DNA of 64,000 bases. Source: Octopus sinensis (taxonomy: Eukaryota). The DNA is taken from positions 84,816,001 through 84,880,000 of the forward strand of contig NC_043003.1 in NCBI RefSeq assembly GCF_006345805.1. The letters run 5' to 3'. A program made the position numbers and the translations under genes. This document shows, in pieces, positions 29,371 through 64,000 of the stretch (positions are counted from its first letter, which is position 1; each line of letters starts with the position of its first letter). A model generated the notes under the pieces. That model was not told where the DNA came from. It saw only the letters and a list, made by a program, of their open reading frames with translations, and did no database searches.

Positions 29371-29442
<72 letters not shown>

Positions 29443-33050: not shown

Positions 33051-36000
33051 AATTAGCGTTAGGAAGCTCTTTGCTATATTGGTGGAAGCTCCTAGATGGA
33101 TGGAGGATTAAACCATATTGTTTTTCACTTTCTATCTATGTCTTGTAACTGAACCATTCCACAAGTTCGATAAAATAAGTACTAGACAGGAGTAGTCACT
33201 GGGACCGATATGACTGACTGGACACTTGAAGATGGAACATTAGAAATCAGCAAAATATTGTGTGTGTTTGTGTGTGTGTGTGCACGTGTGTGGGTACGTG
33301 CATATATATCTATGTGTATATGTGTGTGTTTGTGCGTACATATATATCTGTGTGTGTGTGTATAAATATGTGTATGTATATAGTATAAATATCTGTTTCA
33401 GTCTAAAATTTCCAGTCACAAGGCAATGATTAACCCAGATCTTATCCAAACAATTCCTTGTACAGCGAAGTTGAATCATAGATATATTCGTCATTACTAT
33501 CTTTATAGTTATATAGTCATTTTCATAATTATTATCAGTATTTTGGGAATACCGTATATGCCCACAGTGCACGCCCGTTGGGTACAATTTATGGCACATC
33601 AGAATAGATTACACAATAATTCGTTTACTTATCTCTAACTACATGCAATACCGCATTATACTGTGTTATAGAAACATTTTCAGTATTATGATATATTGGT
33701 ACTTCAAACATTTTTCCAAACTCAAATGTAATGTTTAATATTTTGACTATTTGTAGAAAATAACTGCCCTGCTCTGAAGCTTTTTCATGCCAAAAGGACA
33801 ACCCAATTCTTCAATGTAACACCATTCAGTTTTCCGGATGATGGCAGGTAATCAATGATCTGGATTATATAGTACCTACTATAACTTTGCATAATATTGG
33901 ATATCGTAAAATAGCAATAAGTTCGGCACATGCACTCTTCGTAATGTTTTTATATATATTGTTAAGTTTTCTTCGTATCTTTTGCTTAAAACCAAGAGTA
34001 TTTTTTCTGCTGGTTTCGGCAAGGTGAAAAAAAAACTGGTTAAATAATCCAACCACAATCGACATGGAGAGCACATTTTCTCTTTAATCTAAGGTTGTGC
34101 CTTCAATTTCTTTTCTTCATTAAAATTAGATATATATTCACACATGAAAGTAATTCTTTTGCTTAGGCGATGTCATATTATTGCTTGCTTATTGTCCAGC
34201 TTATGTTATCATATGGAAAACGACAACATTCAGCATATTGCTTACAATTACATGAGAAAAACTCATTTGACATATGCCGTTAAAGCTCGTAAGAAATATA
34301 CAGAATTTGTTACTTCTCATTTACATAATCGTTACCATCATCGTTACCATCTTCGTCACCACCGATATCATTATCATCATCATCATCACCTCCATCGTCA
34401 TCAATAATGCTATTATCATCACCAACATTGTATCATCACCACTGATATCATCATTAGCAGTAGCAGCTATCAACTACAAAGTACACTTGCTTTGGGTATG
34501 ATCATGAAATCGTTAAATATTCCGTTCTCTCATCAATCACTCTACCATTGTACGCCATTAAGGTCTTGATTATGATTTTGGGAGGCAATCCACAGTTCAT
34601 CCTTCCATCGGTGGATTTTTAGATGATAATTTGGCTGATGGACAACGTTGTGCGTCTTTCATTGGGTTTTAACATTAACGAAAGCTACATGTTTAATAGG
34701 GCATGTTCATGATCAATTCAGTTGATCCACTCTAGAATATTACTGCTATATATCGCATCGATGCCGGATGAATATAATGTAAAGAAATGAGACTGAATAG
34801 GAAAAAGCAGATTTGTCGTTCACAATAAATTGGTTTTGTACTAACTGCCCCTTAAATGGCTAACAATGGCATTACTTGATTGTTACATATTCTATCGATT
34901 CCCAATGGCATAAAGGGTCAAGTCAGCATCAGAGGTATTTCAACTGAGAACTTAAATAAGATATAATTAAATACCTCAAGTTATTTAAACTAACACTCCT
35001 CGGTTTCAACTACCCACCGTCCTAACTTGGACTAAATTGTTTCTAATGTAGATAAAAAGCCTGAAATTCATGAGGATTCAACTGATTATATCGAACCCTG
35101 TATTTGACTGGTATTTTTTAATTTAACGATCTCTGAGAGTTGAAAGGTGGGACTTGATCTCGTAAAGAGCCGGAACAAGTATCGCAAAGCATTTTGCATG
35201 AGGCTCTTGCGCTTCTGCCAACTCACGGCCCGATGTCAAGCTTTGAAGGAATGGTTTAGTCAATATCATTGTTCCCAGTACTTGGTTGGTGCTATATTTT
35301 ATCGATCCTGATAGAATGAAAGGCAAAGTTGACCTTGACACGGTTGTGCCACTTCACTGCCTTACCTGCACTAAATGATAGCTTCAAATTTTGTTACAAG
35401 GGCAGCAATTTTGAGGGAAGGGGGCAAGTCGGTCACATCGGCTCCAATGCTCAACTGATACTTATTTTATCGACTCCTGTATGATGGAAAGCAAAATCGA
35501 CTTCGGCGAGATTTGATCTGGTGTGCTAAGGATTCGGCAAGATTTTGTCTGGTGTGCTAAGGGTTCAGCTTGATCAGCGCCTTATCAGTTCTTCTATTGT
35601 AGACACAAGGCCTGAAATTTTGGTGGGGTTGGATTTGTAGTCTATTACATCGACCCCAGTGCTCAACTGACACTTATCTCAACTCTGAAAGGATGACTAG
35701 TAAAGTCAACCTCGGGGGAGTTTGAATACAGAACGGAAAGACAGATGAAATGCCATCAAGCATTTTGTCTGGCATGTTGATAAACTTGCACTAAATAACA
35801 AAAGATAAAATTGTGAGCCATTTGGTTTAATCTTTTTCTTATTTGGTTTTGTTTTATTCTACCTTTGTCACATCTATTGTTGCAGGACTTGTAAATGGTT
35901 TATTTCAAACGGGGGAGGAAACGACACCATTCTGCTGCAGTTTCTTTTTACGGATATGGGAGAAGAAAATGAAGACTGCCAATCAAAGTATATCGCTGTA

Positions 36001-36662: not shown

Positions 36663-37929
36663 TGTGTGTGTGTGTATGTGTGTGTGTGTGTGTGTATCAT
36701 TAACGATAACGATATACATGTGAAAGTTATAGTTGCTAAGTCAATTGATATTAAGTCACATCTATGACGAGATGTTTAATTCATATCACCACAACCCAGC
36801 TAGTTGTACTGTATATAAGTGCCAATACAGTACTGGAAATGGTGACAACACTATATAACTAACAAGTGATTTCTTTGCTTGCATGCCGGGATTTAGATTC
36901 CATTATAAGTTTGCAAAGTGCAAATGATTCAATTCCAGTGTATCTCAGAATATACTCTTGCGTGTTTTCGTCATGAACGAATACTATGTCTTAAGTAGAG
37001 TAATATAATCTCCACTTAAACGTGGGTGTTCTGTTAGAAGAAACTATACTATGGTAGATACCACGAGAGAAACTCTCATATTGGTTTTTGGTGTAAAAAT
37101 GTACACTTAGTTATATCGCTAGCAGGGAGATAACTCTCCACCACCTCCAGTGCTGCTTCAGCGGCGCTCTGTATAAACAAGGGTTGTGGTGGGAGAGGTT
37201 TAGTTTTCATGAGCACCATTACATAAAATGCATAAATATATGTTTTTTTCAGGTTCGCCAAACTCAAGAACACTTCTGAAAAAGTTTTGCAATGATGAAA
37301 ATCCGATATTCCAAACTGAAACGAAATCATTCCATGTGATGTTCTACTCCGCGCACCCTATAGTGGATGTATCATTCGTAGCAAAGTACGAACTTCTCTC
37401 ACGTAAGTCCTTATGCGGGTTGTTTTGCTGGTTTGTGTGTGTGTGTGTGTGTAAGTGTGAGCTCAATGTTTACATGAACAACACAAAAGATGCATGCATA
37501 AACGACTTTTAAATTCATTCAGCACCACATATGCACACACTAATAGAAACTCTCTCGCACGCACACACACACATACACACACACACACACACACACGTAC
37601 GCACGCACGTATGCATACACACATAAACGCTGACAGCGACTAATTTTCGCTTGACAATTTTAAAAGTCAAACAAAATTTTATAAGTTTCAGTGAAAAGGA
37701 ATTTTATAAGCATGATTCTACTGTCAATATTGTCCCCCCTCATCAGTAATGCTTTGCTGTTATATCTGGACTTGCGTTAGCATAATGACTGCCAATATAC
37801 ATCAGAAAACAGAGAGTTTGAGGGAGCCACAACTGTTGGAAGTTCGAAGTCACCGTTAAACTTTTCCTTTTCAAATATAAAATTGCTGTTCAAATATAAT
37901 ACCCTATGTAATATAACTGTACATATAAG

Positions 37930-43047: not shown

Positions 43048-44849
43048 GTAAATAATATATAGTATTTTGTTTGTTTGTTTGTTTTTCAAATCTGTATACA
43101 GAGTATTTTCTGTGTATTTCCCTTAAACTAAGTGGTAAGTAATGTAGCGGTTCTTTGCTGAGATAATATTAACACTTTAAGAATTGTGCTTTCAAGATTT
43201 GAAATATTACATTCCATAAAATATGACATGTAATAGGCACTCCCCCCCCCCCCGTTCTCTGTGACATATAGAATGGAGATGATGCACATTATGAAATATC
43301 TATATAAAAAAAAACTGTTACTGAATTTTTCTAACCCTTGGCGACACAGAATTATATCATAGAAAATATGTATTGCGGATATATTTCTACTTGAAATTAT
43401 TAAGTTGACTAAACTCGATGTGAGACGTACAAAATGTTGTCACAAGTAAGATCTATTCCAACGTTGAGAAATGTGTATGAGTACGGACAAATGTATGTTC
43501 AAGTATGCATACACGAACGCATATAAACTCCTATGCAAATGTATACGTGTATGCATATCACATGCTCTGTATTCGTAACAGCGTAGGACTTTTCCTAGAA
43601 TGGAAATGTTCACATATGTAATGTTGCATTTTATATACAAAGACTAGCGAAATATTTACTACAATATTCTGTTACCCAGTAATCAAAATATGTATAATCC
43701 TCTGTTCTTCGGACAGTAATGTATGAATATTAATTTATTCTTTGGGCATCAATGTGTCAAATATTTTGGTACTGATTAGGAAAACGCGTAAAAGTACACA
43801 GAATATGAATCGTTGATTGGTTGATAAAAATCATTTTAATTAATTCACTTGTCAAAGAAATCAATGGGTCCGTGACTGCATCCTGATGAAGTCGCTCAGG
43901 CATGGTATAAAGTTCACCTTTTGCATGAAACAGTTGTTACAAAGTCATCACAGTTTCCTAAAGAAGCCTAGAATGCATTTTACATGGTGGAGGCTATCCT
44001 CAACTAAATTGTTTTGTTGACCACTGACAGGTCTCCACTCACGCTTTAAAAGTTCTACTAAATTCTGTTGTAGCTGAATTACTGAACTTACTTCTGATTC
44101 CAGTAGTCATTTCATGTTCGACATTTAGAGCAAAATAGTGAATGAAAGTTATCTTGCTTCTACATTCAAGTTCTTATTTCGATCTTATATTCCTAGATCC
44201 TATTTGAATCTTATATAACACCATCATATTGCTAGTCTTATTGGAATATGCTGTGCAAAGTCTGTCTTCTGTTTTTTTTTTTTTTTTTGGGGGGTTTTTT
44301 TCAATTTGCAATCCAGAATCCTTTGCGTTGTGATCTTAAAATATTGTATGTTCTGCTACTACACTTTCCAATCTAGATATAATCGTAATCCAATTCAATT
44401 AACAAGAAGTATATTATATCCGCGATGAGGTCTATATCTGTTGGTAAAGGCATCTCCAAATCTACGAAAGCTTTTTAAAATCAGGTTAGATTGGGTAATT
44501 CGGTCCTTGATAACCTTTGTCTGAAAATATAACAAACATAAGCTGACGGTTACAGCTGGAACACGTTTGATCATGGCTTAAATACTGTTGATCTAGTACA
44601 GCCTATAAATTTAAAATTCAACTATTTTGCATTAATTTTTTTTTTTAAATGCTTTATCATCATCATTATTATTATTATTATGGCAGGTGGCGAACTGACA
44701 GAGACGTTAGCACGCTGGACGAAATGCTTAACAGTATTTCGCCCGCCGCTACATTCGGAGTTCATATTCCACCGAGGTCGGCTTTGACTTTCATCCTTTA
44801 GGGGACTAATTATTATTATTATCATCATTATTATTGTTATTATTATATG

Positions 44850-46068
44850 TTTGATTTTTGCTTTCTATTTATACAAGTTAACTCCAACTATCACCCAGAG
44901 ACCTCAATAGACAACAAGTTAGAAGTTAAAGTTGGTGTTATGACTAGGGTGCATATATTTGGTTTTGCACAAAGTATTGTTCTAGAGAATGTTTAAGAAA
45001 ACATAAGAAAATTATAAGTTTGTTTGAAAATTTGAGTTTACATAGACAGTATTTTACGTAGCATATGGGCAATTCCCATGAGCACTATTTTTTGAATTTC
45101 AGCCATTTTGGGATTTCGTGATATCTGTGTTAGGTAGCAATCAGCTCCTTTTGCTATCATTCCTAAGGCACCTATGACAACAGGTATTGTTTTAGTCTTG
45201 AGATTCCACATTTTGCCAATTTCTATTTCAAGATCTTTATATTTGCTCAGATTTTGGTAGATTTTGACAGATACATTTATATCGAATGGAACAGTCATAT
45301 TGATGAGGAGGCATGATCTTTGTCTGAAGTCCTTCAATATAATGTCTAGCCTATTCACAGCTATCTTTCTGTCAGTTTGAACGGTGAAGTTCTAGAGGAT
45401 TGAGATGTGGTCATTTTTAAGCACTGGAAGTGGCTTGCGTTCCCATCAGTTTTTATCATGGGGCAGGTCCAAGTTTTTGCAAATTACACAGTAATATACT
45501 GTGCTGCTCTATCATGCCTGTTGAGATACTTTGTAGGCACAAGAAGACTGCAAATGGTGGCAACATGATCAATGGTTTCATTTTGTTGTTTACATACACA
45601 ACATGTTGGGTTACTGCCGTTCTTTAATATGTTGACCTGGTAGGTCTTTATCAATAGGTATTGATCTTGGGCTGCTATGATAAACCCTTCTGTCTTTGAT
45701 TTTTAAGCCAGAGAACACTAACCATTGACGGGTAAGGGCTCTGTCAACATCGGTATTATTAACTCTCTTTGGGTATTTGCTATTGAGAGATTTTCCAGTA
45801 CGTCTAATTCTGGGATTTGTTTTTTGGAATTCATTTAGATATTTCTTTGCCTGTTTTGTTACTGAGTATGATAGTTTCTTGTTTTCCTGCTTTAAAACAA
45901 GTTTTAACATCTAGTCATCAGCGTTTTTCGGGTAGATGTTTCGGTCTGTTGTGTCAATCATCGTTAATTCCAGTTGTAAAAGTCCACAACCAAGCTTTTT
46001 TCTTGGCATGTAAAGTGGTTCTATATCTGCTTTTGGGCAGTGCATTCTGTCAACAATTTGTCAACAAT
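44850..46068 (-). mobile_element. R4/Dong-clade 3' fragment in the last intron of the CUB-TM gene
   Basis: MHCPKADI, MLKLVLKQENKKLSYSVTKQAKKYL, ETIDHV, LLINMTVPFDINVSVKIYQNLSKYKDLEIEI and IPVVIGALG. Close to copy 1 and retains the 3' end that copy 1 lacks. Confidence 0.88.
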
Positions 46069-46271
46069 TTCTTCTTCTTCTTCTTCTTCTTCTTCTTCTT
46101 CTTCTTCTTCTTCTTCTTCTTCTTCTTCTTCTTCTTCTTCTTCTTCTTCTTCTTCTTCTTCTTCTTCTTCTTCTTCTTCTTCTTCTTCTTCTTTTTCTTC
46201 TTCTTCTCTTCTTCTTCTTCTTCTTCTTCTTCTTCTTCTTCTTCTTCTTCTTCTTCTTCTTCTCCTTCTTC

Positions 46272-46304
<33 letters not shown>
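46069..46304 (+). repeat. (TTC)~67 followed by (ATT)~10, immediately upstream of the last splice acceptor
   Basis: Read directly; two small interruptions near 46195-46208. Confidence 0.95.
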
Positions 46305-46312
46305 CATTGTAG

Positions 46313-46512
46313 GTACTAAAATTCCTCAGCAGTCTCTGGATCGAACTCCAATCATTTGCATCATTCTCATTGTGGCTGTGATCATATGTATTATTTATGT
46401 ATTTAACTGGTATTGGCAGTGTTGTCGACACAACAAGATAAACAGATTACACACTTGGAGGACCTCTCGAAAAAACTACCACAAATTCGACAACGATAAT
46501 ATTGAAGAGTGA
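46313..46512 (+). CDS. CUB-domain membrane protein, terminal exon f (TM helix and tail): (G)TKIPQQSLDRTP-IICIILIVAVIICIIYVFNWYW-QCCRHNKINRLHTWRTSRKNYHKFDNDNIEE*
   Basis: Acceptor cattgtag after (TTC)n(ATT)n. The phase-1 start matches exon e. It encodes a 22-residue hydrophobic segment, then a basic juxtamembrane stretch and TGA, with AATAAA 30 nt downstream. Confidence 0.82.
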
Positions 46513-48800: not shown

Positions 48801-49372
48801 TACGGAGGACCTGAATGAAAACAATTGCAGCGCGGAAGGTGTTTCTAAGCCATTTAAAACACACAAAAACCCTTAGATTCATTTCAACATTTAAATTTAA
48901 TTTGTCAAAATAGTTTCGTTGCTTTGAGATCGCGACCTGTTCACTGTCAAAATTCCGTGTTATATATATATATATTTCTTTACTACCCACAAGGGGCTAA
49001 ACATAGAGGGGACAAACAAGGACAGACAAAGAGACTAAGTCGATCACATCGACACCAGTGCGTAATTGGTACTTAATTTATCGACCCCGAAAGGATGAAA
49101 GGCAAAGTCGACCTCGGCGGAATTTGAACCCAGAACATTTAACGGCAGACGAAATACGGCTACGCATTTCGGCCGACGTGCTAACGTTTCTGCCAACTCG
49201 CTGTGTTATATAGATATATTCAAATGAATATGGTACTTAAGTTGAGACACCAGAATTTAGTACGGTATTATCCATACAATTTCAAAGTAAGGTGATTTAA
49301 ATCAAAATAAGCAACAAGGATATCAAAGATATCGTACTGCATTACCTCTCGATATACTTGTTGCTTATTTTG

Positions 49373-51430: not shown

Positions 51431-54159
51431 CTACCACAAAATAGAACTTAACTATTATGAAGTGTAAATCAGGACAAAGCAAAGTTTGAAGGGTAAAAAT
51501 TACAGCAACAAAAAAGAAAGAATACACTCGTGAAGTGAAATAAAATATTTATTTTAATAATTATTACAACAATCATTAATTTTTAGTTCATTTAGAAATT
51601 TAGAATTATTTGACATTTTATAATTTAGTCAAATAAAATTTTCCGATCGTTGAAAAAAAATATATCAAAATCAAAAGAATTGAATATACTTAATAATTTG
51701 TAGGTATTGCTTTTTTTATTAATAGCTTCATTTGAAGAAGTGTAGTGGGAAGCCGTGACATTCGTTCAAAGGATAGTGACGCGAGGAAAATGAAATAACC
51801 ACAGCAGATGATTCAAACTAAATCGCAGAAACGTATTTGGTTTTTACTGTGAAGAAATAAAATAAATGAGGGAAACTCTACGGGACTGCTAGAAATAGCA
51901 GACCAAATCAAACTCAGACCACTTTGTAATGTCTTTAGAAAAAAGGAAGGCTACAATGAACAACATTCTTTACTTCCTTTGTTTGTTTTTGTCAGCATTA
52001 CCAAGGAGATGCCAAAGAACCGCTATCATGATTCACCGGTATTCAAAAAGTTGAGTGCTAATCTTTGGAACACATTTGACCATATGTCTTTTCCCAGCTT
52101 ATCCCAGAATAGTGTGAGGGAAGTAAAATAGATTCAACCGGTTCCGTTCAGTCAAAACCTATTTACAACTGATTTACTACAAGGTTACACATTGAGAGGG
52201 AAAGAGTAGAGTTCGAACTTTTAATATGTATTAAGTGTGGATGGATGATTGTTAAACTTGATGCGCGTGCGTGTGTGAGAACAATACTTATCCATTATTA
52301 GTAGAAAAAGAAGGGCAATGGATTGACAGAATCGTCAATGCGTCGAACAAATCCTTTGCAGGATTTGTTCCGATTTTTTATGTCTGTAACCAAGGCAAAC
52401 TTGTCTTTTCATTCCTCTAAAGTAGATAAAATAAAGAATATGTCATGTACTGACGTAATCGACTAACCTCCTTCTCTCGAAATTGCTGGCCTTGTACCTA
52501 AATTTGAAATTAATTTAGTAGATAGGAAAAACGCACCCTTGTGTTTGTAAGTGTGTCTAGTGATCAATATTAAGTTGTTGTTTCACTCCAGTTTAGAAAT
52601 GACTGAGCAGACATATGATGAAAGACGTTCCAATCTTGACCACTTAGTATAGGACCTCATTATATAATGGGTTTTGTAAGACAGTGGAACATGAAAAAAC
52701 TTGGTTGCTATTTCCAGCAAATCAAGTGACCACATAGAGTTCCCCTTTCGCCGCTGGCTCCAAAATTTGTAGTAAAAGGAACATGTTTGAGAGTAGGTCA
52801 CAGTAAACACCGAACTGGATGTTTTATTCTATATAGTTCGGTATCTCATTTCTTTTAGTTCAAAACTCTGCTGCAATAAATTTCATTTATCCTTCAGTGA
52901 GTCTGTAAAAAAAACTATCAGTAATACACTGGAGTTACTTTTACTGACTCCCTCGTCACTTCAATTCATGTCTAGCCAAATAAAATCAATATTAGAAGTA
53001 GCATATATTATTTTTTGAAAATCATAACTGATAGAAAATTAAGGATAAAATTTAAACAAAAGTTTTCTTAATGTTCTTGGTATTCTGTAAGTGTTCTTCA
53101 ATTAAAAACCAAAATCGCCGAGGTCAACAAAGCCAGAAGACTTGTCAAAGGAATTTGCACATCTAAAATGAAATAAAATAAAATTTGATACAATAATTAA
53201 ATAAAATAGAAGATATATTCATTCGCTTTACATGTAATTCAGTCAAAGCATAAAAAGGATCCGACGATAATTTATAAGATAGAGTGAGGTTTAATGAGTA
53301 AGCATTGTATTATTCAGAAACAGTGCTTCATTTATTCATTTCAAACAACTCAGAGCAAGAAATGAGGAATATCTGGGATGTTGACTGGACAAAAGACTAC
53401 TCCCAAATTACACTTTCCTTATTACAAAGCCAGAGACCTTGCTCTTGCCTGTTTCTAGAGTACTTGGCTTTGTAGGTGAGTCTTTGCGGTGTTGTGCAAG
53501 TTGTTATTGAATTTAATTTCAACACAGAAATTGCTGACATCCATTGTGCTTAAAGTCTAGGAACAAGATTAATTGTCGATGATGATCATACGATTTTACA
53601 TCCACCCTGTATGTATGTATGCATGTATGTATGTATGTATGTATGTATGTATGTATGTATGTATGTATGTATGTATGGCTGGCTTGCTGGCTGACTGGAT
53701 GGATGGATGGATGAATGGATGGTTTGCATACATTCAATCGAAACGGGCTGGTAAATATATGAAGCATGTGAACTCTCTTTCTGAGAAGGGTACGAAACAA
53801 ATATTTTTGCGTGACCAGCGCGGTCGTGTCAGCTTCTCAAAGGCAGGCCTACTCAATAACAAGTGGGATTATGAAGTTGGCCCGTCTACAAATCCATTAT
53901 GTTCTCTTGTGAACCGTCTTTAGTAGAATAAGTGGGTCAGCCAATGGACTCTATTGGATTTGTAGATCCCAACACCCATTGGTCGGGCTATTGCTAAATG
54001 GCTGACTTGTGATCGGTGAGGAATGACTTGTAGGTCTCTTGCAGGCCTTAGGAGTCATACGATACGTCATTAGCGATGGAGAGACAAAACTTAAGATATT
54101 TCTTAGACTCAAATGGGTTTAGAAAGCAGTTTTATCATGTCACGAGTCGACTTCCATAA

Positions 54160-54420
54160 TGTATGAATGTATGTATGTATGTAAGTATGTATGCATGCAT
54201 GTATGTATATATGTATGTATGTACGTATGTATGTATGTATGTATGTATGTATGTATGTATGTAGGTAGGTAGGTAGGTAGGTAGGTAGGTAGGTAGGTCG
54301 GTCGGTAGGTAGGTAGGTAGGTAGGTAGGTAGGTAGTAGGTAGGTAGGTAGGTAGGTAGGTAGGTAGGTAGGTAGGTAGGTAGGTAGGTAGGTAGGTAGA
54401 ATGAATGAATGAATGATATA
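54160..54420. repeat. Compound tetranucleotide microsatellite (ATGT)n-(AGGT)n-(ATGA)n. Others: (ATGT)n at 21505-21565 and 53610-53720; (GTA/GTG)n at 14077-14190; (TAA/ATT)n at 22720-22890, 29365-29465, 56527-56625, 56880-56974 and 57165-57250
   Basis: Read directly. Confidence 0.95.
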
Positions 54421-54698
54421 TAGGTATGCATTATGTGTATAAATAAGCAAAAGAGTTTACTCTACGTAGTTCCTAATCATAATTTTCTCGACTCTCTGTT
54501 ACCTGGTTTAGGATAAACAGCATCAATCAACATGTTGAAAAATCCTTATAATTTCAACTGCGGGATATTATAGACTGTTTCAGTATCTAGAACTTTCAAG
54601 ATAGACAAATCTTTGTTGAAATAAGTTGCAGTTGTATCAACAATATTCCAAGCTATGGTATAAATTGGTACCTGAGCCATCAGATGAACCATAATAAG

Positions 54699-54957
54699 TA
54701 TTGGGTTGGTGCGTAATTATTGCGGGGCTTTTTTCAACAAATTTTATTCAACAAAAACAATAACAACATTTAACAAAAACATCTTTAAATGATTATTCCG
54801 GAGCATATTCACCATCTACTTCAATTACTGCTTCCCGTTTGCTTGGCAGACGATCAGACCGTCATTTAAAGATGTTTTTGTTAAATATTGTTATTGTTTA
54901 TGTTGAATAAAGTTTGTTGAAAAAAAAAAACCGCAATAATTATGCACCAACCCAATA
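54699..54957. mobile_element. Palindromic mariner MITE (MADE-like) with about 95-bp TIRs
   Basis: TA-ttgggttggtgcgtaattattgcgg...catctttaaatga / tcatttaaagatg...ccgcaataattatgcaccaacccaa-TA. Confidence 0.88.
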
Positions 54958-56525
54958 GAATGTTTTTCTGTTTCTACACATAAAGGAGTAGAGGCTTGAT
55001 TGTAATGCCTCTTGAAGCTGATAACGTTGAGCTAATTATATTTTCCTTAGATAAGTGCTTGTTAGATGGTATACCTGATGTTTAGAGTATTCACTCTGAA
55101 GAGTGAATTCACTTTGATTATTAATAAACAGATGCTGGGGATGTGTATATGTGCGTTTACGACTGTTTCCTGATGGAAATTATGCTGGTTAGGCAAGATT
55201 AGATCGCTTTAATATCGTATGTATTGATGAGCTTTTTACGTTTCTACGGCGATATAAATATGGCATGTCCTTAAACAATGAAAATTCATATCTTCTATGA
55301 ATGATGTTAATTTGTCTATCTATTCAATTTTGCATATTATGACTGCAATTTGCACTGATTAATAATATTATTATTACTCTTTTACTCTTTTACTTGTTTC
55401 AGTCATTTGACTGCGGCCATGCTGGAGCACCGCCTTTAATCGAGCAACTCGACCCCGGGACTTATTCTTTGTAAGCCCAGTACTTATTCTATCGGTCTCT
55501 TTTGCCGAACCGCTAAGTAACGGGGACGTAAACACACCAGCATCGGTTGTCAAGCGATGGTGGGGGGGCAAACACAGACACACAAACATATACACACACA
55601 TACATATATATATATACATATATACGACAGGCTTCTTTCAGTTTCCGTCTACCAAATCCACTCACAAGGCTTTGGTCGACCCGAGGCTATAGCAGAAGGC
55701 ACTTGCCCAAGATGCCACGCAGTGGGACTGAACCCGGAACCATGTTGTTGGTAAACAAGCTACTTACCACACAACCAACCTGCGTAATTTTATTTTTATT
55801 TTCAAGAAATTACTATACGAATGAAAGGAGTCGATCTAAATATACACACATACAAATTATTATATCAATTAAATAGTAATAAACAATTCATAATTTTAGT
55901 AAACTGATAATACACTTATATTTCATAAGCCAGGATCTGCACTTCTTGTTATTTCTGGATGTGATATTTCCTTTGGCCTCTTAGTACTGACATATTAATA
56001 TCCTAGTCCATTTTCATTCACTTTAACATATCCTCAATGAAGGAGACTGATTTAAATGTTAAATTCAAGCTTATCGTCGACTGCTGACCAATTCATTCAC
56101 CTTACTGCAAATTCCTTACTGTGTAAAATTTTTACAATGTCAGAAATAAGTGTCCTAGGTGTTGCGATAGTAGGTCCAATGACACTCCCCTGCATATTGT
56201 AATTGAATTTACTCTATATCCTTGTTTACAATACATACTTTTTTTCACTAAATCAGTATTAGAATTAGGGGTATTAGATTGCATAGATTTTCCTAAAGCA
56301 ATTTCATTAAAGAAATAATAAAGCGTAATAATTTTTTGGACTATTTATTGATACTTACTAATACACACACACACACACATTTGTATTATATAAACTGAAC
56401 TATTAAACATTAATATATTGGAATATAGTGTGTTATCTACCCCTATAAAATTTATGCGACACTGTGAGTAATATATGGTAACATATCAAGATACATTTCC
56501 TGATATTTTTCTCTAAGACTATGTC

Positions 56526-56614
<89 letters not shown>

Positions 56615-56880
56615 AAGAAGAAGAAGGGGGATATTCGACTACATCGACCTCTGTATTCAACTGGTACTTAATTTATCGACCCCGAAAGGATGAAAGTCAA
56701 CCTCAACGGAATTTTGAGCTCAGAACGTGAGGACGGACGAAATACTGTGAAGTATTTCGCCCGGCATGTTAAGGATTGTGTTTCAATTAGTTAATTTTTA
56801 TCTGGTGGGCCTTGTAACTGACACAACAAGCTGTTGTATCGTAAAATTAACCAAAACTATATGTGCAACAAAATACACAC

Positions 56881-56965
<85 letters not shown>

Positions 56966-57170
56966 ATTATTATTCAGAAGGTGAGCTAGCAAAATCCTTA
57001 GCATGCCGGGCGAAATACTTCACAGTATTTCGTCCGTCCTCATGTTCTGAGCTCAAATTCCACCGATGTTGACTTTCATCCTTTCGGGGTCGATAAATTA
57101 AGTACCAGTTGAATACAGAGGTCGATGCAGTCGACTATCACCCTTCCCCCAATTCAGGCCTTTATTGTTG

Positions 57171-57231
<61 letters not shown>

Positions 57232-57892
57232 CATTATTATTATTATTATTGAATTAGAGAGCAGTGCATGCCAACAAAGTAACAATGTGGTAGAATATAC
57301 GAAGTCCAATATACCCATCATAAATCCCCGTCTGATAAGGGTACATGAGGCGCATGCATTACAACCATATGTCGTGCACGTGGGGCCCAGTTAGAATTTT
57401 TATAATTCTTAAAATTTCCTTTTAATCTATTATGGAGTAAATGATTTCATTGGCATTTATAGTAAACGTAAATCAAATATATTAAATGTTTCATAGTTTG
57501 AAAGGTATTTTGAGAACAAAAATCATAGAATAAGATAGTACATTTGCTGAAATCCACATTACGACTATATGCTTATTGTTCTGAAGTTAAAACATTCATT
57601 TGACCTACTCACTCATAGACCACACTTTAAATTTTAGTGCATATGAATTATTTAAAAGCTATAGATTTCTATCTATTCTGTAGACTATACTATAGGTTTA
57701 CTAAATTTTAACACGATGTAGATGTCCGAAGTTAATATCTATTAGATTCAATGAGAGTAATGTGCAACTTCCACTATTTCATATTGATATATTGCTTCAA
57801 TCAATAATTCACTATCATGTCAAGAAATTATTCTCAAAATTCTACATAATATTTTCATCAAAGCAAGTTTCAACCACATGTATATATATATA

Positions 57893-58278
57893 GTGGAGGC
57901 GCAATGGCCCAGTGGTTAGGGCAGCGGACTCGCGGTCGTATGATCGCGGTTTCGATTCCCAGACCGGGCGTTGTGAGTGTTTATTGAGCGAAAACACCTA
58001 AAGCTCCACGAGGCTCCGGCAGGGGATGGTGGTGATCTCTGCTGTACTCTTTCACCACAACTTTCTCTCACTCTTTCTTCTTGTTTCTGTTGTACCTGTA
58101 ATTTCAAAGGGCCGGCCTTGTCACTCTCTGTGTCACGCTGAATATCCCCGAGAACTACGTTAAGGGTACACGTATCTGTGGAGTGCTCAGCCACTTACAC
58201 GTTAATTTCACGAGCAGGCTGTTCCGTTGGTCGGATCAACCGGAACCCTCATCGTCGTAACCGACGGAGTGCTTCCAC
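57893..58278 (+). mobile_element. Full-length tRNA-derived SINE (family 3) inserted in a TA tract
   Basis: A-box-like tggcccagtggttagg and B-box-like ggtttcgattccc, followed by a GC-rich body sharply distinct from its AT-rich flanks. Confidence 0.8.
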
Positions 58279-58447
58279 TATATAAATAAATAGCAATAGA
58301 AGTTTTTTGTAGCAGTTACATCTAATAACATCTGATATATTTTAGTATTATTATTCAAGATATTAATGAATCCATTAACGAAATTATGAACAACACGACT
58401 GTAAGATATAAAGGATAATAGTACATGCATTTATAAGCATTACTTAC

Positions 58448-58483
58448 ATTTTGGGTTTTCAAAGCTTGCAGCAGCTCTAGACC
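58448..58483 (-). CDS. Putative 36-nt micro-exon (GLELLQALKTQN or xSRAAASFENPK)
   Basis: Minus strand reads atgtatctgcattttccag|ggtctagagctgctgcaagctttgaaaacccaaaat|gtaagta. Flanks are more distantly homologous to the other three units. Confidence 0.5.
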
Positions 58484-60849
58484 CTGGAAAATGCAGATAC
58501 ATGTTATGTTCAAACTATGAAACGCTATTTAATAAGACATATTACAAATATATATTTCTGTTTTGTCTCATAATGTTTCAGATTATATATTATACGATAA
58601 AATAATTAATTATATGTGGCAAATATACTCAAATAAGAACCATGAACAAAAACCCCGTAAATGTCCAGTCAATATTTCTAAAATGCAATATGTTACCATG
58701 AGGCCATGTACAATACGGATGATATTTAGTTTATCATATATCTAGGCGAAACACATAGAGTTAAAACAGACATGAAAATTGAGAAAGTATTGCTCCTTTC
58801 ATAATTTTTCGACCTTAAACTATACGAAAGAAATGACACACTGGTTCACCGTAAACGTAACTACCGTGTCAACTCATGCCATTATCATATGATGAATAAT
58901 TCCTCAAAATATATGACAATCCTATTCAAGGAGGAGACAGCATGAGAACGATAGAAATTTCTGATATCTCGCAATCGATCTGCATAACATATGATGAATA
59001 TTAAGACGTCCATTCGATACACAAAATATATTTAACTTGTAGTATAAATTCAATTCATCGATAGAAAGCATGTAACTTAACACAGCTGAAGACTGTGCGT
59101 ATAATGTTCCTATCATAATGTTTTGTATGACTGGATTGTAAGAATGACACTTCACACTGTTCATTCATAAACACATTTCACCAAGTCCAGACATCAGCAA
59201 AAACTGTCACTAACGGCTGATACATCCATCTTCATAAGTGATTTTGGAGGTATACCTAACTAATTCTCTTAAATTGTATTTTTGTAGTTTCAACGGAAAC
59301 GTTTCGAGAAAAGCAACCAAAACTATTCTTCTAAATATGATTGTAAAATCCGTTTGATAATTCTTCCTACTATATACACAAGGTCTGAAATTTCGGGGTT
59401 AGGGGCTAATCGATTACATCGGCCCCAGTGCGTAACTGGTACTTATTTCATCGATCCTGAAATGGATGAAATGTAATGTCGACCTTGGCGAAATTAGAGC
59501 TCAGGACGTAAGAAACACCGCTAAATATTTTCCCTGGCGTTCTAACGATTCTGCCAGCCGCCGCTTAAAATTCGCTTAATAATAATATTTATGTCTATAT
59601 AAAACATCATTACCATAATCTGCTTTATAATAAATAGTATAATTGATATTAGATGTTTTATAGTTTGAAATAGATTTTTTCACAATCAAGTAAATATATA
59701 CTACATTTTTAGACATCTATATTAATATTAAAGACCTTATGTTCAGCTGTTAAAAAATTCATTCCACCAACTAAATCCTTTCTAATATAGTTACAAGGCC
59801 TGAAATCACTTACTTTATAGAGTTCAAATGATAAGATATATAGATCAGGGATTTTGTGGTTTAAAGTAGTAGAAAGGTCTGGAGCCCCACAAAATCCCTG
59901 ATCTGTAGAACTTATCCATTCAATAGGTCCCCATGTACGGAAAATAGTTGTATAGAATATTGGATGAGACCACAGGTTAACTGCAAGTTTAGGAATATAG
60001 TATATGGCTTACGATATACTGAAGGACGGTGCAGAAACAAGACAACTACTTACATTGAAGAGACAGCATGTAGTATAGATGAGCGGGAGCTCAAAGAAGA
60101 GAAAAGCTCATCAGTGCTCTATCAAAATGCTCAAGCAGACCATAGAAGTTCGGTTAATAACATAGAGGTTAAGGTTTATTATCATTATTGGCTTTCTATT
60201 CCATTCGTTATACTATCTACTTCCAAAACTGAGACAGTATATCCATGTCAATAATAAATATTTATTTGAGGCAATGTTTGTGATGCATGTCATTTTCTAT
60301 ACCTCGAAGTATTCTCAAAGTTCAATCACTGGTTTACGATAAATTATACATCAATGTTCTGACCAATGCAACATGTAACATTCTTTAAAGTAACTTTCAG
60401 ACATGTATCAATATATAGCAATATACATCAAAACATATTGGTTGACAGCATTTCATATTTACATTCTTAAACATAAATAGTTTCGTATTTTTATAATAGT
60501 TCGTATTGAAACTATGAATTGCTTCAAATATGGGCACAGACACAGCAATTTTGTGGGATACCTGTTCAATCATTTACATGTAACCAAATAGTTGAGTACG
60601 ACTTTATTTTACCGCCTGCGACAGGAGGTAATGCAATGATAATCTCAGCAGCATTTCAACGCATACCGAAGGGAACCAAATGACGAGGAATCTTATACCT
60701 CTTAGGAATCTTATACGAGGAATCTTATACCTCTTAGGAATCTTATACATTTTAAAGATTCTGCCTCAGGAAATTATGAATAAAAACACGAATATAATAA
60801 TTACAAAATTGTTTGAGTATTAACGTAATTATATATAAGCATCCGTTAC

Positions 60850-60879
60850 CTTTTTCAGTTGTAGTAGGATTGGTTGGGC
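60850..60879 (-). CDS. Putative 30-nt micro-exon (AQPILLQLKK or xPTNPTTTEK)
   Basis: Minus strand reads atgtactttatatatttctag|gcccaaccaatcctactacaactgaaaaag|gtaacg, with homologous flanks. Confidence 0.5.
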
Positions 60880-62909
60880 CTAGAAATATATAAAGTACAT
60901 ATTATTATACAACGAAAATCTGATTACAATGTCATTTTCCATAATAGATACTATGGATACACAACATACCATTTTTATGTTTCCTCTAATAATAATTTCA
61001 ATGGCATGCACACCGAATATATTATTAGCATTTAATATACAATAAATATTGCTACTTTTGTTTATTACATATTTCGGATTATATGAAAGACACGACATCC
61101 AGTTTTAGCGTGAATTTATCAAAGTTATTTACCTTATACTACAAGGTAGATCGGTATAAGGATACACCAGTACCACTAACTGACGGTTTACGTTATGCAG
61201 GATACTCATTGCATGACTTTATCAGATATATATCGGGATTCATTGCCATCTTCTTTGCTATTCATCATACAAAGGGTCTTAATAAACGAAGATTATAGCA
61301 CTGAGATATAAAGAATGCTATTGGTATGCACAGTTTTGATGTTGTCACAGAAGGTTATGATTTGTTCAACTATTTCATATTTCCCAAACTGATGTATAAC
61401 TAACTATATCCTTTAAATTATAAAGCAATATAGTAAAACTAGGTTTTCTAAATGTAATTTTAAAAACACGTAAGTTTCAATACTATTTTTAAATTCGTAA
61501 CAATATCTAAACTTACATGCGTGTAATTTTCTAACTGCTTAAAATTCATGCGTTGAAACATTACAGTTTTCATTATAATCTCCTCTCTTGAAAACTATTT
61601 TATTGGTGATTACGGTAAGAGTTTTGATTCAATATATCGTTCATAAACGGGATTAGATTACATTACAATTTTCATTATAATCTCCTCTCTTGAAAAATAT
61701 TTTATTGGTGATTACGGTAAGAGTTTTGATTCAATATATCGTTCATAAACGGGATTAGATTTCTTCAAAGACTTTCCGGAACATTCTATATTTTACGCTA
61801 TTCATATGAACGTAAATACTTTATCATCAAAATTTCAATCAATCGTTTACTTGAAACTTTTTCGTTCTTACACAATTTCATTTCAAGTTTTGATAAATTA
61901 TCATAAATCTATTTTCATTATTGGCTTTCTATTCCATTCATTATAATAACCACTTCCGAAACTGAGACATCATATCCAGGTCAGTAATAAATATTTCTTA
62001 GAGACAATGTCCGTGAAGCACGTAATCGTCTGTTCCACGTAAATTTCCCAAAAGTTAAAACACTGATTTACAATAAGTTATACTTCAGTGTTTTAACAAA
62101 GCAACAGGTAACAGTCTTTAAAGTATGTTACAAATATGTATCAATATATAGGGAATTACAACAAATTATTTTATAATATTTACAAAATATCAGAACATAA
62201 ATATTTTCGTATTTTAATAATAGTTCGTAATGGACACATGAAGTGTTTCAAATATGAGCAGAGGTCGTGCTATTTTGTCGGAGACAAATTAAATCGATTA
62301 CATTACATATGTTTTTATCAGATATTTCTAGATATTCATTTCCATATTGTGTGCTATTTATCATACAAAAGTTATTAATAATCCAACATTAGAGCACCCA
62401 GATATAAAGAATGGTTTGATTCATAGCGATCATGTTGTCACTGAATGATACATTATTTCAACTGTTTCATATTCCTCCAAGCCAAGCATAACTATATCTA
62501 TTTCTTTTACATTATGAAACTATATACTAAAACTATGTTTGCTAACTGTAATTTATAAACACTTAAGTTTCAATACTCTTTCAAAATGTGCGACGATATC
62601 TACAATCTACACGTATATGCGTGCAACTTTCTAATTACTTAAAATTCATAATTTCTAACATTGTGATATTCATTAATATCACATCTCTTGAAAATGATAT
62701 CATTGAGGATTTTTATATTTCATGTAATTCATATAATCACAGCATTTCAACGCATACCGAAGGGAACCAAATGACGAGCTGCTTAGGAATCTTATACCTA
62801 TTAAACATTCTGTCATGTTTTTACATCAGGAAATTATGAATAAAAAGATGAATATTTCAATTATAAAACTTTTTGAGTGTTAACGTAATTATATATAAGA
62901 ATCCCTTAG

Positions 62910-62939
62910 CTGTTGAACTTGCTGAAGGATTGATTGCAG
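62910..62939 (-). pseudogene. Putative 30-nt micro-exon copy with dead donor (LQSILQQVQQ or xAINPSASST)
   Basis: Minus strand reads atgtattttatatatttctag|ctgcaatcaatccttcagcaagttcaacag|CTaagg. Homologous to 60850-60879, but the GT donor is CT. Confidence 0.45.
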
Positions 62940-63874
62940 CTAGAAATATATAAAATACATATTATTATACAAAGAATATCTGATGACAATATCATTTTCC
63001 GTAATAGATATTATGGATACACAACATATCTGTTTTATGTTTCCTCTAATAATAACATCAATAGCTCTCGATAAAATATACCTTTCACAAACTCCATCAG
63101 ATTTTTTCACTCAGAATGTTCCTGGAAATGTCTATATTTCATGTCATTCATATAATCGTAAATACTGCATCATTTTCAGAATCCTTTTTACATCCTACAC
63201 ATTTTCATTTCCTGCTCGGCTTAATTGACTAAACTCTATTATTATTTCTGGCTTTCTCTTCTGTTCATTATACTAACTACATTCGAAACCGAGACATCAT
63301 ATCCATGTCAGAAGCAAATATTTATTAGAGGTAATATTTGTAATGCATGTCATCTTTTGTTCTACATAGTTTTACCAAAGTTCAAACATTCATATACAAT
63401 GCCTCATTTTTCAGTGTTTCACCAAAGCAACAGGTAAAGTAAATTACAGATATGTATCAATATATAGCAACATACATCAATACTTATTGTTTAACATAAT
63501 TTTATAATATTTACAACGTTTCAAAACATAAATATTTTCGTATCTTTATAATAGTTCGTAACGAAAATATGAAGTGCTTCAAATATGGGCAGAGGTCGTG
63601 CAACTTTGTGGGTGATCAATTCAATCTTTTACATTAGGCCAAATTGTTGAGCGTGACTATATTTTTCCGTCTGGCACAGGAGCTAATGCATTGATAAACA
63701 TGCCGGCATTTCAATGCATACCGAAAAGGGACACATGATGGTCAACTCAGCATTTTGGCCACACGTTAAATATTCTGTCAGTTGCTTACCTCAGGAATCT
63801 ATCAATAAAGCGATGAATATTTTAATTGTAAAATTCATTGAAAATTAACTTATTTATATAAGAGCATCACTTAC

Positions 63875-63895
63875 CTGTAGAATTTGTGTCAGGGG
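63875..63895 (-). CDS. Putative 21-nt micro-exon (PLTQILQ in phase 0; xPDTNST in phase 1)
   Basis: Minus strand reads atgtattttaaatatttccag|cccctgacacaaattctacag|gtaagtg. Strong consensus splice sites, with flanks homologous to three other array units. Confidence 0.5.
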
Positions 63896-64000
63896 CTGGA
63901 AATATTTAAAATACATATTATTATACAAACAAATCTAATTGCAAATTCATATTCCGTAATAAATATTTGGAATATACTATATATCATTTTATGATTACTC

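What the first reader, a model, noticed from the sequence alone, without database searches (positions are those of the whole stretch)
57400..64000. Tandem array of duplicated intron-plus-micro-exon cassettes: candidate micro-exon gene on the minus strand
Four diverged paralogous units each contain, at the homologous position, a minus-strand pyrimidine tract plus AG, a very short block and a donor: 58448-58483 (36 nt), 60850-60879 (30 nt), 62910-62939 (30 nt, donor GT changed to CT) and 63875-63895 (21 nt). The AT-rich flanks are alignable but full of arbitrary indels, whereas all four block lengths are multiples of 3 and stop-free in phases 0 and 1. Phase 0 gives GLELLQALKTQN / AQPILLQLKK / LQSILQQVQQ / PLTQILQ (amphipathic, shared I/L-L-Q). 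Phase 1 gives Ser/Thr/Pro mucin-like peptides. Of 11 differences between the two 30-mers, only 2 fall on second codon positions in phase 0 versus 5 in phase 1, weakly favouring phase 0. Symmetric exons of 6-36 nt that can be skipped freely are the hallmark of schistosome micro-exon genes (MEGs), which make variable secreted proteins. I know of no such architecture in cephalopods. The model (a gene growing by cassette duplication, with birth and death of micro-exons) is inference, and the 5' part would lie beyond 64000.
Basis: partly seen in the sequence, partly recalled or inferred. Interest (0 to 1): 0.82.

Follow-up and report, generated by a model that had tools for sequence, protein, structure and literature searches.

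The report
Octopus micro-exon mucin-like gene
The four short blocks are real: three are exons and one a dead exon of an annotated Octopus sinensis gene for a tiny threonine-rich, mucin-like surface protein, built almost wholly from 21-36-base exons in duplicated cassettes, an architecture so far described for parasitic flatworms.

Summary
The window is Octopus sinensis chromosome CM016865.1, positions 84,816,001-84,880,000. Blocks 63875-63895, 60850-60879 and 58448-58483 (minus strand) are exons 8, 9 and 10 of RefSeq gene LOC115213828. Block 62910-62939, whose donor is CT, is in none of the four annotated isoforms.

The protein (96-110 aa) has a signal peptide, 7-aa Thr-rich modules, GPTNPTTTEK, GSRAAASFENPK and a hydrophobic tail that looks like a GPI signal.

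There are 11 coding exons. The nine internal ones are 21-36 nt, all multiples of three and all phase 1-1. They make up 67% of the coding sequence. Isoforms X1-X4 are reproduced exactly by including or skipping 21-nt exons.

The cassettes are tandem duplicates, up to 98.9% identical at an exact 1756-bp period. The exon is the most variable 21-nt stretch in them (pi 0.228 against 0.050 for the intron), and most changes alter the amino acid.

A second copy 155 kb away has nine 21-nt exons instead of six.

The gene meets published working definitions of a micro-exon gene, but has no sequence homology to the flatworm genes. I saw no transcript reads. Real exon skipping, positive selection and GPI anchoring are inferences.

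The parts
63875..63895 (-). Exon 8 (21 nt, phase 1-1), encodes (A)PDTNST. It is the last of six 21-nt heptapeptide micro-exons; the other five lie beyond the window end.
   Evidence: AG/GT flanked. Equals L001 32336-32356. Needed to rebuild all four RefSeq isoforms exactly.
62910..62939 (-). Dead cassette exon (30 nt, would encode (A)AINPSASST). The acceptor AG is intact and the donor GT has changed to CT.
   Evidence: it is in no isoform. The homologous cassette in the second gene copy has a GT donor, and its peptide ATINPSASVT is in XP_036360301.1.
60850..60879 (-). Exon 9 (30 nt, phase 1-1), encodes (G)PTNPTTTEK.
   Evidence: Identical in the second gene copy.
58448..58483 (-). Exon 10 (36 nt, phase 1-1), encodes (G)SRAAASFENPK. 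The AAAS run is the likely GPI attachment region (inferred).
   Evidence: Two amino-acid-changing differences from the second copy against 0.6% in the flanks.
53098..53162 (-). Coding part of the last exon (65 nt including the TGA stop), encodes (Y)VQIPLTSLLALLTSAILVFN, the hydrophobic C-terminal tail.
   Evidence: Identical in the second copy. Hydropathy.
60100..64000 (.). In-window part of the tandem cassette array: three diverged units made of shared segments, roughly 60109-60683 / 61842-62305 / 63169-63738 and 60741-61005 / 62801-63065 / 63766-64000. The array continues upstream for about 8 kb with younger 1756-bp units.
   Evidence: Direct-repeat families D4, D6-D9 and D15-D16, alignments, and matches of the cassette intron only inside this array within the window.
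53163..58447 (-). Intron 10 (5.3 kb), not part of the cassette array. It carries (ATT)n/(ATA)n tracts and dispersed SINE-like repeat copies (56623-56780, 56985-57170), plus a 390-nt GC-rich insert at 57885-58275.
59375..59585 (.). SINE-like dispersed repeat inserted in intron 9, between exons 9 and 10. It helps explain why the 58448 unit aligns poorly with the others.
   Evidence: At least 6 related copies in the window.

Best explanation
The region is the 3' third of a 33-kb protein-coding gene on the minus strand, Octopus sinensis LOC115213828.

**The product.** It is a 96-110-aa orphan protein. It has an N-terminal signal peptide, a stalk of about 60 residues that is 60% Thr/Ser/Pro, and a C-terminal hydrophobic tail. 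The stalk is presumably O-glycosylated and carries an N-glycosylation sequon in the in-window exon 8. The tail is preceded by small residues (AAAS) and an 8-9-residue spacer, as in a GPI-attachment signal. The protein is most likely a small membrane-tethered or secreted mucin-like glycopeptide.

**The architecture.** Each stalk module has its own micro-exon: six of 21 nt, two of 30 nt and one of 36 nt. All are phase 1-1, so any subset can be spliced together without changing frame. The micro-exons sit in tandemly duplicated cassettes of about 1-2.4 kb.

**How it evolves (inferred).**
- The array grows and shrinks by unequal recombination between cassettes.
- Units die by splice-site mutation.
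- Surviving exons diverge by amino-acid-changing substitutions much faster than the surrounding introns.
- Exon skipping adds further product variety.

**Shown here:** the exon map, the phases, exact reconstruction of four annotated isoforms, cassette homology and the excess of exon over intron diversity.

**Inferred:** transcription and skipping (from the RefSeq models only), diversifying selection, glycosylation, GPI anchoring and biological role.
For: - **Database match.** A query joining both candidate frames hit only Octopus sinensis proteins, and only through the Ser/Thr/Pro frame. Accessions are XP_029638584.1, XP_029638585.1, XP_036360759.1 and XP_036360760.1.
- **Locus identity.** The gene locus L001 is identical to the window (L001 position = 96231 minus window position).
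- **Exon map.** There are eleven coding exons of 46, 30, 6x21, 30, 36 and 65 nt. Every intron is GT-AG. The four isoforms are rebuilt exactly as all exons, minus E3, minus E3 and E5, and minus E3 and E6. None uses the CT-donor unit.
- **Micro-exon share.** Micro-exons make up 222 of 333 coding nt.
- **Young cassettes.** Units E4/E5 and E5/E6 are 98.9% and 97.3% identical at an exact 1756-bp spacing.
- **Exon hypervariability.** Across 15 21-nt cassettes from both gene copies, exon pi is 0.228 and intron pi 0.050. None of 820 intronic 21-nt windows reaches the exon value, and the 12 nt on either side are nearly invariant.
- **Pairwise tests.** Exon versus intron differences are 2/21 vs 17/1730, 3/21 vs 44/1730 and 5/21 vs 55/1730 (Fisher p 0.02, 0.02, 0.0005).
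- **Codon changes.** pN/pS is 1.6 over all pairs and 2.6 within this gene.
- **Between the two copies.** Non-repeat exons differ at 7/207 sites against 21/3581 in the flanks (p 0.0006).
- **Copy-number change and exon death.** The second copy has nine 21-nt exons instead of six and keeps a GT donor on the cassette that is dead here. A second dead cassette, 29 nt with an AT donor, lies upstream at L001 21659-21687.
- **Protein features.** Both ends are hydrophobic and the middle is 60% S/T/P.
Against: - I could not inspect any RNA reads. Transcription and splicing rest on RefSeq models, which are predictions, even though multiple isoforms normally need transcript support.
- No independent transcript-derived copy of the protein was found in the 15-billion-protein collection.
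- The apparent skipping isoforms could be transcripts of alleles with fewer cassettes, or mis-alignment of short reads among near-identical 21-nt exons.
- The two 'paralogues' are collinear at 95-99% identity over more than 50 kb. They might be uncollapsed haplotypes.
- The pN/pS estimate rests on 7 codons and about 6 synonymous sites. pS also exceeds intron diversity.
- GPI anchoring and glycosylation were judged by rule of thumb, not by a predictor or experiment.
Confidence: 0.85

Rival explanations
1. The gene is real, but product variety is not made by alternative splicing. All intact micro-exons are constitutive, and isoforms X2-X4 reflect allelic copy-number differences in the cassette array, or read mis-assignment among near-identical exons. 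On this view it is a mucin-like gene that happens to have one exon per repeat.
For: - The youngest cassettes are 97-99% identical at a fixed 1756-bp period, which is the ideal substrate for unequal crossing-over.
- The second copy differs in cassette number, 9 against 6.
- The two copies could be haplotypes.
- The skipped exons (E3, E5, E6) all lie in the youngest part of the array.
Against: - Symmetric phase 1-1 exons, strong uniform splice signals and several RefSeq isoforms are what genuine cassette skipping would give.
- X3 and X4 skip different single exons of the same reference array. That would need at least two further alleles.
Confidence: 0.3
2. The exon-versus-intron contrast is not diversifying selection. 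It is a by-product of concerted evolution: gene conversion or unequal exchange keeps homogenising the cassettes, while the short exons are older patches, or the sample is too small to trust.
For: - pS among exons (0.10-0.17) also exceeds intron diversity of 0.05.
- There are only about 6 synonymous sites.
- Four consecutive cassettes of the second copy have identical exons, which shows recent wholesale duplication.
Against: - Conversion tracts that spare exactly 21 nt while keeping the adjacent 12 nt on both sides nearly invariant would themselves need selection to keep exon differences.
- The single-copy exons E1, E2 and E10 show the same excess between gene copies: 7/207 against 0.6%, with 6 of the 7 changes altering an amino acid (my reading of the exon pairs printed; test).
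Confidence: 0.2
3. There is no functional gene. The blocks are chance AG...GT pairs in a neutral tandem repeat, and the RefSeq models are annotation artefacts.
For: - The loose splice-like pattern occurs at chance frequency in the window.
- I saw no reads.
- There is no Pfam family above threshold and no homologue outside O. sinensis.
Against: - Eleven GT-AG-linked exons assemble into one open frame. It begins with a textbook signal peptide and ends with a stop after a hydrophobic tail.
- All nine internal exons are 3n, while the two units with broken donors include the only non-3n length, 29 nt.
- GC-rich exon islands, nearly invariant splice flanks and hypervariable exon cores are not expected of neutral DNA.
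Confidence: 0.04

Closest known systems
Schistosome micro-exon genes with Thr/Ser/Pro-rich products (MEG-4, MEG-8, MEG-14, MEG-15, MEG-29, MEG-32 types; PMC4671649, PMC4350168)
   Same: - Longer 5' and 3' flanking exons, with the signal peptide in the 5' exon.
- A central coding part made of symmetric micro-exons of 36 nt or less.
- Small, disordered, TSP-rich products predicted to be O-glycosylated.
- Some members have a hydrophobic C-terminus or membrane anchor.
- Isoforms differ by a few residues through exon skipping.
- Evolution of the mature part is accelerated.
- No homologues outside a narrow taxon.
   Different: - No sequence homology.
- The host is a free-living cephalopod mollusc, not a parasitic flatworm, so immune evasion in a vertebrate host cannot be the driver.
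- The micro-exons here are mostly one repeated 21-nt module in very young tandem cassettes (up to 98.9% identical). They are not a string of unrelated micro-exons, which in S. mansoni are most often 15 nt (PMC10526429).
- Tissue and secretion are unknown.
Tandemly repeated exons encoding 81-base repeats in Schistosoma mansoni transcripts (Davis et al. 1988, cited as ref. 10 in PMC10526429)
   Same: Repeat units of a protein are each encoded by their own tandemly duplicated exon, giving multiple transcripts.
   Different: - The exons there are 81 nt against 21-36 nt here.
- I know that work only from the citation, not from its text.
Small GPI-anchored mucin-like glycoproteins (Trypanosoma cruzi mucins, Pfam PF01456; vertebrate CD24/CD52-type; endomucin)
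   Same: The protein plan is the same: signal peptide, short Thr-rich O-glycosylation stalk, and a C-terminal hydrophobic GPI-type signal. PF01456 and Endomucin give sub-threshold compositional matches to the second copy.
   Different: - All matches are below the Pfam cut-offs, so the gene is not a member.
- T. cruzi mucin genes are intronless, and classical mucins encode their repeats in one large exon (my own knowledge). Here every repeat has its own exon.
Ordinary tandem exon duplication (e.g. mutually exclusive duplicated exons, PMC9741552)
   Same: New exons arise by tandem duplication of an exon with its flanking intron.
   Different: Those events typically give pairs of substituting exons of normal size in conserved proteins. 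Here the result is an additive array of nine micro-exons that forms most of the coding sequence.

Membership tests
Micro-exon gene, working definition of Olson et al. 2020 (PMC7653826) | Micro-exons are exons shorter than 70 nt with length divisible by three | tested here: met
   The nine internal coding exons are 30, 21x6, 30 and 36 nt.
Micro-exon gene, working definition of Olson et al. 2020 (PMC7653826) | [quoted passage not shown] | tested here: met
   There are 11 coding exons, 9 of them micro-exons, all nine consecutive.
Schistosome-type MEG (PMC4671649, PMC4350168) | Two longer flanking exons; central coding part mostly micro-exons (<36 bp in that paper); most of the coding region in very small symmetric exons | tested here: met
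   Flanking coding parts are 46 and 65 nt. 222 of 333 coding nt (67%) lie in exons of 21-36 nt, all symmetric and phase 1-1. The largest is exactly 36 nt. UTR lengths of the flanking exons are not known to me.
Schistosome-type MEG (PMC4671649) | Signal peptide encoded mostly or wholly by the 5' flanking exon | tested here: met
   Exon 1 encodes MKTIYLLIVVVAIVS(C). The hydrophobic core was seen by hydropathy. No dedicated signal-peptide predictor was available.
Schistosome-type MEG (PMC4350168, PMC7653826) | Protein variants differing by a few residues, made by skipping symmetric micro-exons | tested here: inconclusive
   Four RefSeq isoforms differ by 7 or 14 aa and equal exact exon-skipping products. 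No reads were seen, and allelic copy-number variation is an alternative.
Schistosome-type MEG (PMC4350168) | Secreted, or expressed in glands or epithelia facing the environment | not testable with these tools
   No expression data were available. No paper mentions LOC115213828.
Schistosome-type MEG (PMC4350168) | Accelerated evolution of the mature-protein part | tested here: inconclusive
   Exon pi is 4.5 times intron pi. pN/pS is 1.6-2.6. Exon excess between copies has p = 0.0006. The data come from paralogous units within one genome and very few sites.
Schistosome-type MEG as a homologous gene family | Sequence similarity to one of the described flatworm MEG families | tested here: not met
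   Only O. sinensis proteins and unrelated low-complexity Thr-rich proteins were found among 5.8 billion clusters and 1.84 billion representatives. No Pfam family is above cut-off. The resemblance is in architecture, not descent.
Mucin-like glycoprotein of T. cruzi (Pfam PF01456) | Score above the Pfam gathering cut-off (34.7 bits) | tested here: not met
   8.9 bits for XP_029638584.1 and 25.1 bits for the second copy.
GPI-anchored protein | C-terminal signal: small residues at the attachment site and two residues after it, a polar spacer of about 8-10 residues, then a 15-20-residue hydrophobic end | tested here: inconclusive
   The sequence ...GSRAAAS-FENPKYVQ-IPLTSLLALLTSAILVFN fits by eye and by hydropathy. 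No GPI predictor or experiment was available.

The most novel reading that the evidence does not exclude
A free-living cephalopod has independently evolved the micro-exon-gene strategy thought to be restricted to parasitic flatworms. A cassette array turns over fast enough to change exon number between near-identical copies. With free exon skipping and selection for amino-acid and glycosylation-site change, it produces a hypervariable surface or secreted mucin-like glycopeptide. That would separate the architecture from host immune evasion. It would point instead to a general way of diversifying glycoprotein coats, for example at skin, sucker, gut or egg surfaces facing microbes or conspecifics.
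Probability: 0.35. Interest if true: 0.75.

Novelty: new member of a known kind. Interest (0 to 1): 0.62.

Why it matters
Micro-exon genes are described as apparently restricted to platyhelminths (PMC4350168). They are usually explained as a parasite's way of varying secreted antigens.

A clear case in a free-living mollusc has the same exon plan, the same kind of Thr/Ser/Pro-rich product and the same fast exon evolution, but no shared ancestry. This shows that the architecture can arise by simple tandem duplication of an intron-plus-exon cassette.

Its cassettes are up to 98.9% identical, and one exon has visibly died, so the growth process can be studied directly.

It also shows that a gene of this kind can sit in RefSeq under generic 'mucin-like' or 'autotransporter adhesin-like' names. 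I found no counterpart from another cephalopod in the protein collections searched, possibly because annotators miss such genes. A systematic scan for runs of symmetric micro-exons outside flatworms would be worthwhile.

Tried and rejected
The query carried both frames and only the Ser/Thr/Pro frame matched.
- **Splice-like pattern as evidence on its own.** Rejected: it occurs at chance frequency.
- **Cassette as a dispersed transposable element.** The 1.7-kb cassette intron matches only the array itself within the 64-kb window.
- **Homologues elsewhere.** Word-indexed and exhaustive HMMER searches gave only the two O. sinensis genes plus low-complexity Thr-rich proteins. Pfam gave nothing above cut-off.
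- **Structured RNA or tRNA in 53000-64000.** None found.
- **Literature.**
  - 'Micro-exon gene' together with 'cephalopod' returned one paper, an aquaculture vaccination review that from its title and abstract is unrelated to this gene.
  - A broader search adding mollusc and Octopus terms listed no relevant paper among the 25 shown.
  - 'Micro-exon gene' together with 'Lophotrochozoa' gave only a tapeworm genome paper.
  - LOC115213828 appears in no paper.
  - DeMarco et al. 2010 and the S. mansoni genome paper were not in the library, so definitions were taken from PMC4350168, PMC4671649, PMC7653826 and PMC10526429.
- **Large ORFs in the window.** These are microsatellite read-throughs or look like transposon remnants. 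None belongs to this gene.
- **Structure prediction.** Not attempted, because the product is short and of low complexity.


Full report
**1. The observation**

Reading 57000-64000 directly and extracting the four blocks on the minus strand confirms every stated coordinate, length, splice dinucleotide and translation.
- 58448-58483 is 36 nt: ccag|GGTCTAGAG...AAAAT|gtaagt.
- 60850-60879 is 30 nt: ctag|...|gtaacg.
- 62910-62939 is 30 nt: ctag|...|ctaagg.
- 63875-63895 is 21 nt: ccag|...|gtaagt.

The flanks are homologous (direct-repeat families D4-D16; alignment A1). The blocks are GC-rich islands, 0.43-0.48 against 0.27-0.29.

A generic pattern of pyrimidine-AG, a 3n block and GTAAG is not rare. 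It occurs 20 times in the window against 24 +/- 6 in first-order Markov simulations of the window. So the splice-like look alone proves nothing.

**2. What it is**

I joined the phase-0 and the other stop-free translations into one query. It hit only four Octopus sinensis proteins, and only through the Ser/Thr/Pro frame. They are isoforms X1-X4 of LOC115213828: XP_029638584.1, XP_029638585.1, XP_036360759.1 and XP_036360760.1. They are 96-110 aa and named 'integumentary mucin C.1-like', 'mucin-2-like' or 'uncharacterized'.

All four contain PDTNST-G-PTNPTTTEK-G-SRAAASFENPK. That is 63875-63895 + 60850-60879 + 58448-58483, with codons split 1/2 across each junction.

The genomic locus fetched for X1 (L001) is base-for-base the window. 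L001 position equals 96231 minus window position. The window is therefore CM016865.1:84,816,001-84,880,000 of assembly GCA_006345805.1.

**3. Gene anatomy**

The coding sequence has 11 exons over 33 kb.

| Exon | Length (nt) | Encodes | L001 position | Window position |
|---|---|---|---|---|
| E1 | 46 | signal peptide MKTIYLLIVVVAIVS | 10001-10046 | beyond window |
| E2 | 30 | CVTSTNGLPN | 19823-19852 | beyond window |
| E3-E8 | 21 each | VHTTSTT, VPTTSTT, VPTTKTT, APTKKTT, APDTKST, APDTNST | starts 24401, 26157, 27913, 29669, 31412, 32336 | only E8 is in the window (63875-63895) |
| E9 | 30 | GPTNPTTTEK | 35352-35381 | 60850-60879 |
| E10 | 36 | GSRAAASFENPK | 37748-37783 | 58448-58483 |
| E11 | 65 with stop | YVQIPLTSLLALLTSAILVFN | 43069-43133 | 53098-53162 |

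- Every intron is GT-AG, and every internal exon is a multiple of three and phase 1-1.
- Micro-exons supply 222 of 333 coding nt.
- A brute-force search over exon subsets rebuilds the four isoforms exactly: X1 has all exons, X2 lacks E3, X3 lacks E3 and E5, and X4 lacks E3 and E6.
- The CT-donor unit (62910-62939) is in none of them.

**4. The cassettes**

Upstream of the window the units are very young. E4/E5 and E5/E6 are 98.9% and 97.3% identical without gaps at an exact 1756-bp spacing. The in-window units are older and rearranged, with spacings of 924, 956, 2060 and 2396 bp, extra internal tandem duplications and a SINE-like insertion. Within the window the cassette intron matches only the array, so it is not a dispersed repeat.

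There are two dead units. One is the in-window 30-nt unit with donor CT. The other lies upstream: 29 nt, donor AT, at L001 21659-21687. The only non-3n length belongs to a unit with a broken donor.

**5. A second copy**

A full-length search found one more protein, XP_036360301.1. It is encoded 155 kb away in the same orientation and is likewise followed by a CUB-domain gene.
- It has nine 21-nt exons (PGTNTT, TTAKTT x5, PVTNTT, PGTNTT x2). Its E9 and E11 are identical to those here, and E10 differs by two amino acids.
- Its homologue of the dead unit has a GT donor, and the peptide ATINPSASVT is in the RefSeq protein. So that cassette was once, or is elsewhere, a working exon.
- Oddly, its acceptor reads AC instead of AG. 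I cannot explain this.
- Its annotated start lacks a signal peptide, but a near-perfect copy of exon 1 lies 5 kb upstream.
- The two loci are collinear at 95-99% identity over more than 50 kb. I cannot tell a recent segmental duplication from uncollapsed haplotypes.

**6. Exons evolve faster than introns**

- Among 15 21-nt cassettes aligned with 430-nt flanks, exon nucleotide diversity is 0.228 against 0.050 for introns. No intronic 21-nt window out of 820 reaches the exon value (maximum 0.170). The 12 nt on each side of the exon are almost invariant.
- In the youngest units, exon versus intron differences are 2/21 vs 17/1730, 3/21 vs 44/1730 and 5/21 vs 55/1730 (Fisher p 0.02, 0.02, 0.0005).
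- The in-window pair 60850/62910 shows the same thing: 11/30 in the block against 10/105 upstream. One partner of that pair is a dead exon.
- Proportions of differences per site give pN/pS of 1.6 overall and 2.6 within this gene.
- Between the two gene copies, the non-repeat exons differ at 7/207 sites against 21/3581 in the flanks (p 0.0006). By my reading of the exon pairs, six of the seven change an amino acid.
- Several changes create or remove N-x-S/T sequons, for example K to N in exon 8, and four NTT in the second copy.

I read this as diversifying selection on the peptide modules, with caveats. The sites are very few. pS is also above intron diversity. Concerted evolution of the introns may contribute.

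**7. The product**

Hydropathy shows two hydrophobic ends. The middle 60 residues are 60% Ser/Thr/Pro, with 23 Thr. No Pfam family passes its cut-off. The best hits are compositional: T. cruzi Mucin, Endomucin and New_glue. An exhaustive HMMER search of 1.84 billion representatives finds nothing but the two octopus genes and unrelated Thr-rich repeats.

The tail AAAS-FENPKYVQ-IPLTSLLALLTSAILVFN fits the usual rules for a GPI signal: small residues, a polar spacer and a terminal hydrophobic stretch with nothing after it. This is my inference from general knowledge, not a predictor result.

**8. Comparison with the known**

Published descriptions of micro-exon genes say the following.
[quoted passage not shown] Many products have a Thr/Ser/Pro-rich, O-glycosylated disordered region. 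Some have a hydrophobic C-terminus or membrane anchor and are proposed to form a protective O-glycan coat (PMC4671649).
- A working rule: at least 7 exons, at least half shorter than 70 nt and divisible by three, and at least 4 in a row (PMC7653826).

The octopus gene meets the architectural criteria and the working rule. It fails any test of homology. It works like a micro-exon gene and is a new, independent member of that architectural class. It is not a relative of the flatworm families.

I found no paper linking micro-exon genes to cephalopods or naming this locus.

**9. Verdict**

The gene model already exists in RefSeq under uninformative names. What appears new is the recognition that it is a micro-exon gene with a live, fast-turning cassette array in a free-living mollusc.

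My confidence by claim:
- Real spliced gene: about 0.9.
- Real exon skipping: about 0.6.
- Diversifying selection: about 0.6.
- GPI anchor: about 0.5.

Noticed in passing
L002 36483-36512 (second gene copy, CM016865.1 about 85.03 Mb): The homologue of the window's dead cassette has a GT donor but AC where the acceptor AG should be (ctag changed to gtac). Its peptide ATINPSASVT is nevertheless in RefSeq XP_036360301.1. This could be a non-canonical splice, an assembly error or a model artefact.
   Followed up: partly
L002 4847-4892 versus the annotated start at L002 10001: The RefSeq model of the second copy starts with MGQERN... and has no signal peptide. A near-identical copy of the signal-peptide exon (2 of 46 nt differ) lies 5 kb upstream and would give a 141-aa protein with the same plan as LOC115213828. 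The annotated N-terminus is probably wrong.
   Followed up: partly
L001 and L002 as wholes (155 kb apart on CM016865.1): The two loci are collinear at 95-99% identity over more than 50 kb, including the neighbouring CUB-domain gene. They are either a recent segmental duplication or two haplotypes assembled side by side.
   Followed up: partly
L001 21659-21687 (would be window coordinate 74544-74572, beyond the window): A second dead cassette: typical acceptor flank, 29 nt (not a multiple of three), donor AT. The same remnant exists in the second copy at L002 16670-16698.
   Followed up: partly
L002 17884-17913: A 30-nt block with cassette-type flanks and AG/GT sites (frame-2 TGPTSGRAR) that is not used in the RefSeq model. 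It may be an unannotated or nascent micro-exon.
   Followed up: no
window 43098-46512 (+), equal to L001 49719-53133 (-): The neighbouring gene encodes a multi-CUB-domain protein of 1066 aa, running off the locus. The same neighbour follows the second copy.
   Followed up: no
window 59375-59585, also 56623-56780, 56985-57170, 49035-49195, 29166-29616, 2654-2781: A dispersed SINE-like repeat of about 150-200 nt with at least six copies in the window. One copy sits in the intron between exons 9 and 10.
   Followed up: partly
window 57885-58275: A 390-nt GC-rich insert just downstream of exon 10 whose start looks tRNA-like by eye. ARAGORN and Rfam find nothing, and it has no other copy in the window.
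   Followed up: partly
window 61558-61761 and 60683-60748: Very recent small tandem duplications inside the cassette introns: 102 nt x2 at 98% identity, and 32 nt x2 at 100%.
   Followed up: no
window 8209-8541 (-), 26368-27158 (+), 30967-31299 (+), 45038-45910 (-): Open reading frames that look like transposon remnants by eye: transposase-like, reverse-transcriptase-like and mariner-like. The AT-skewed stretch 24000-30000 probably belongs to one such element.
   Followed up: no
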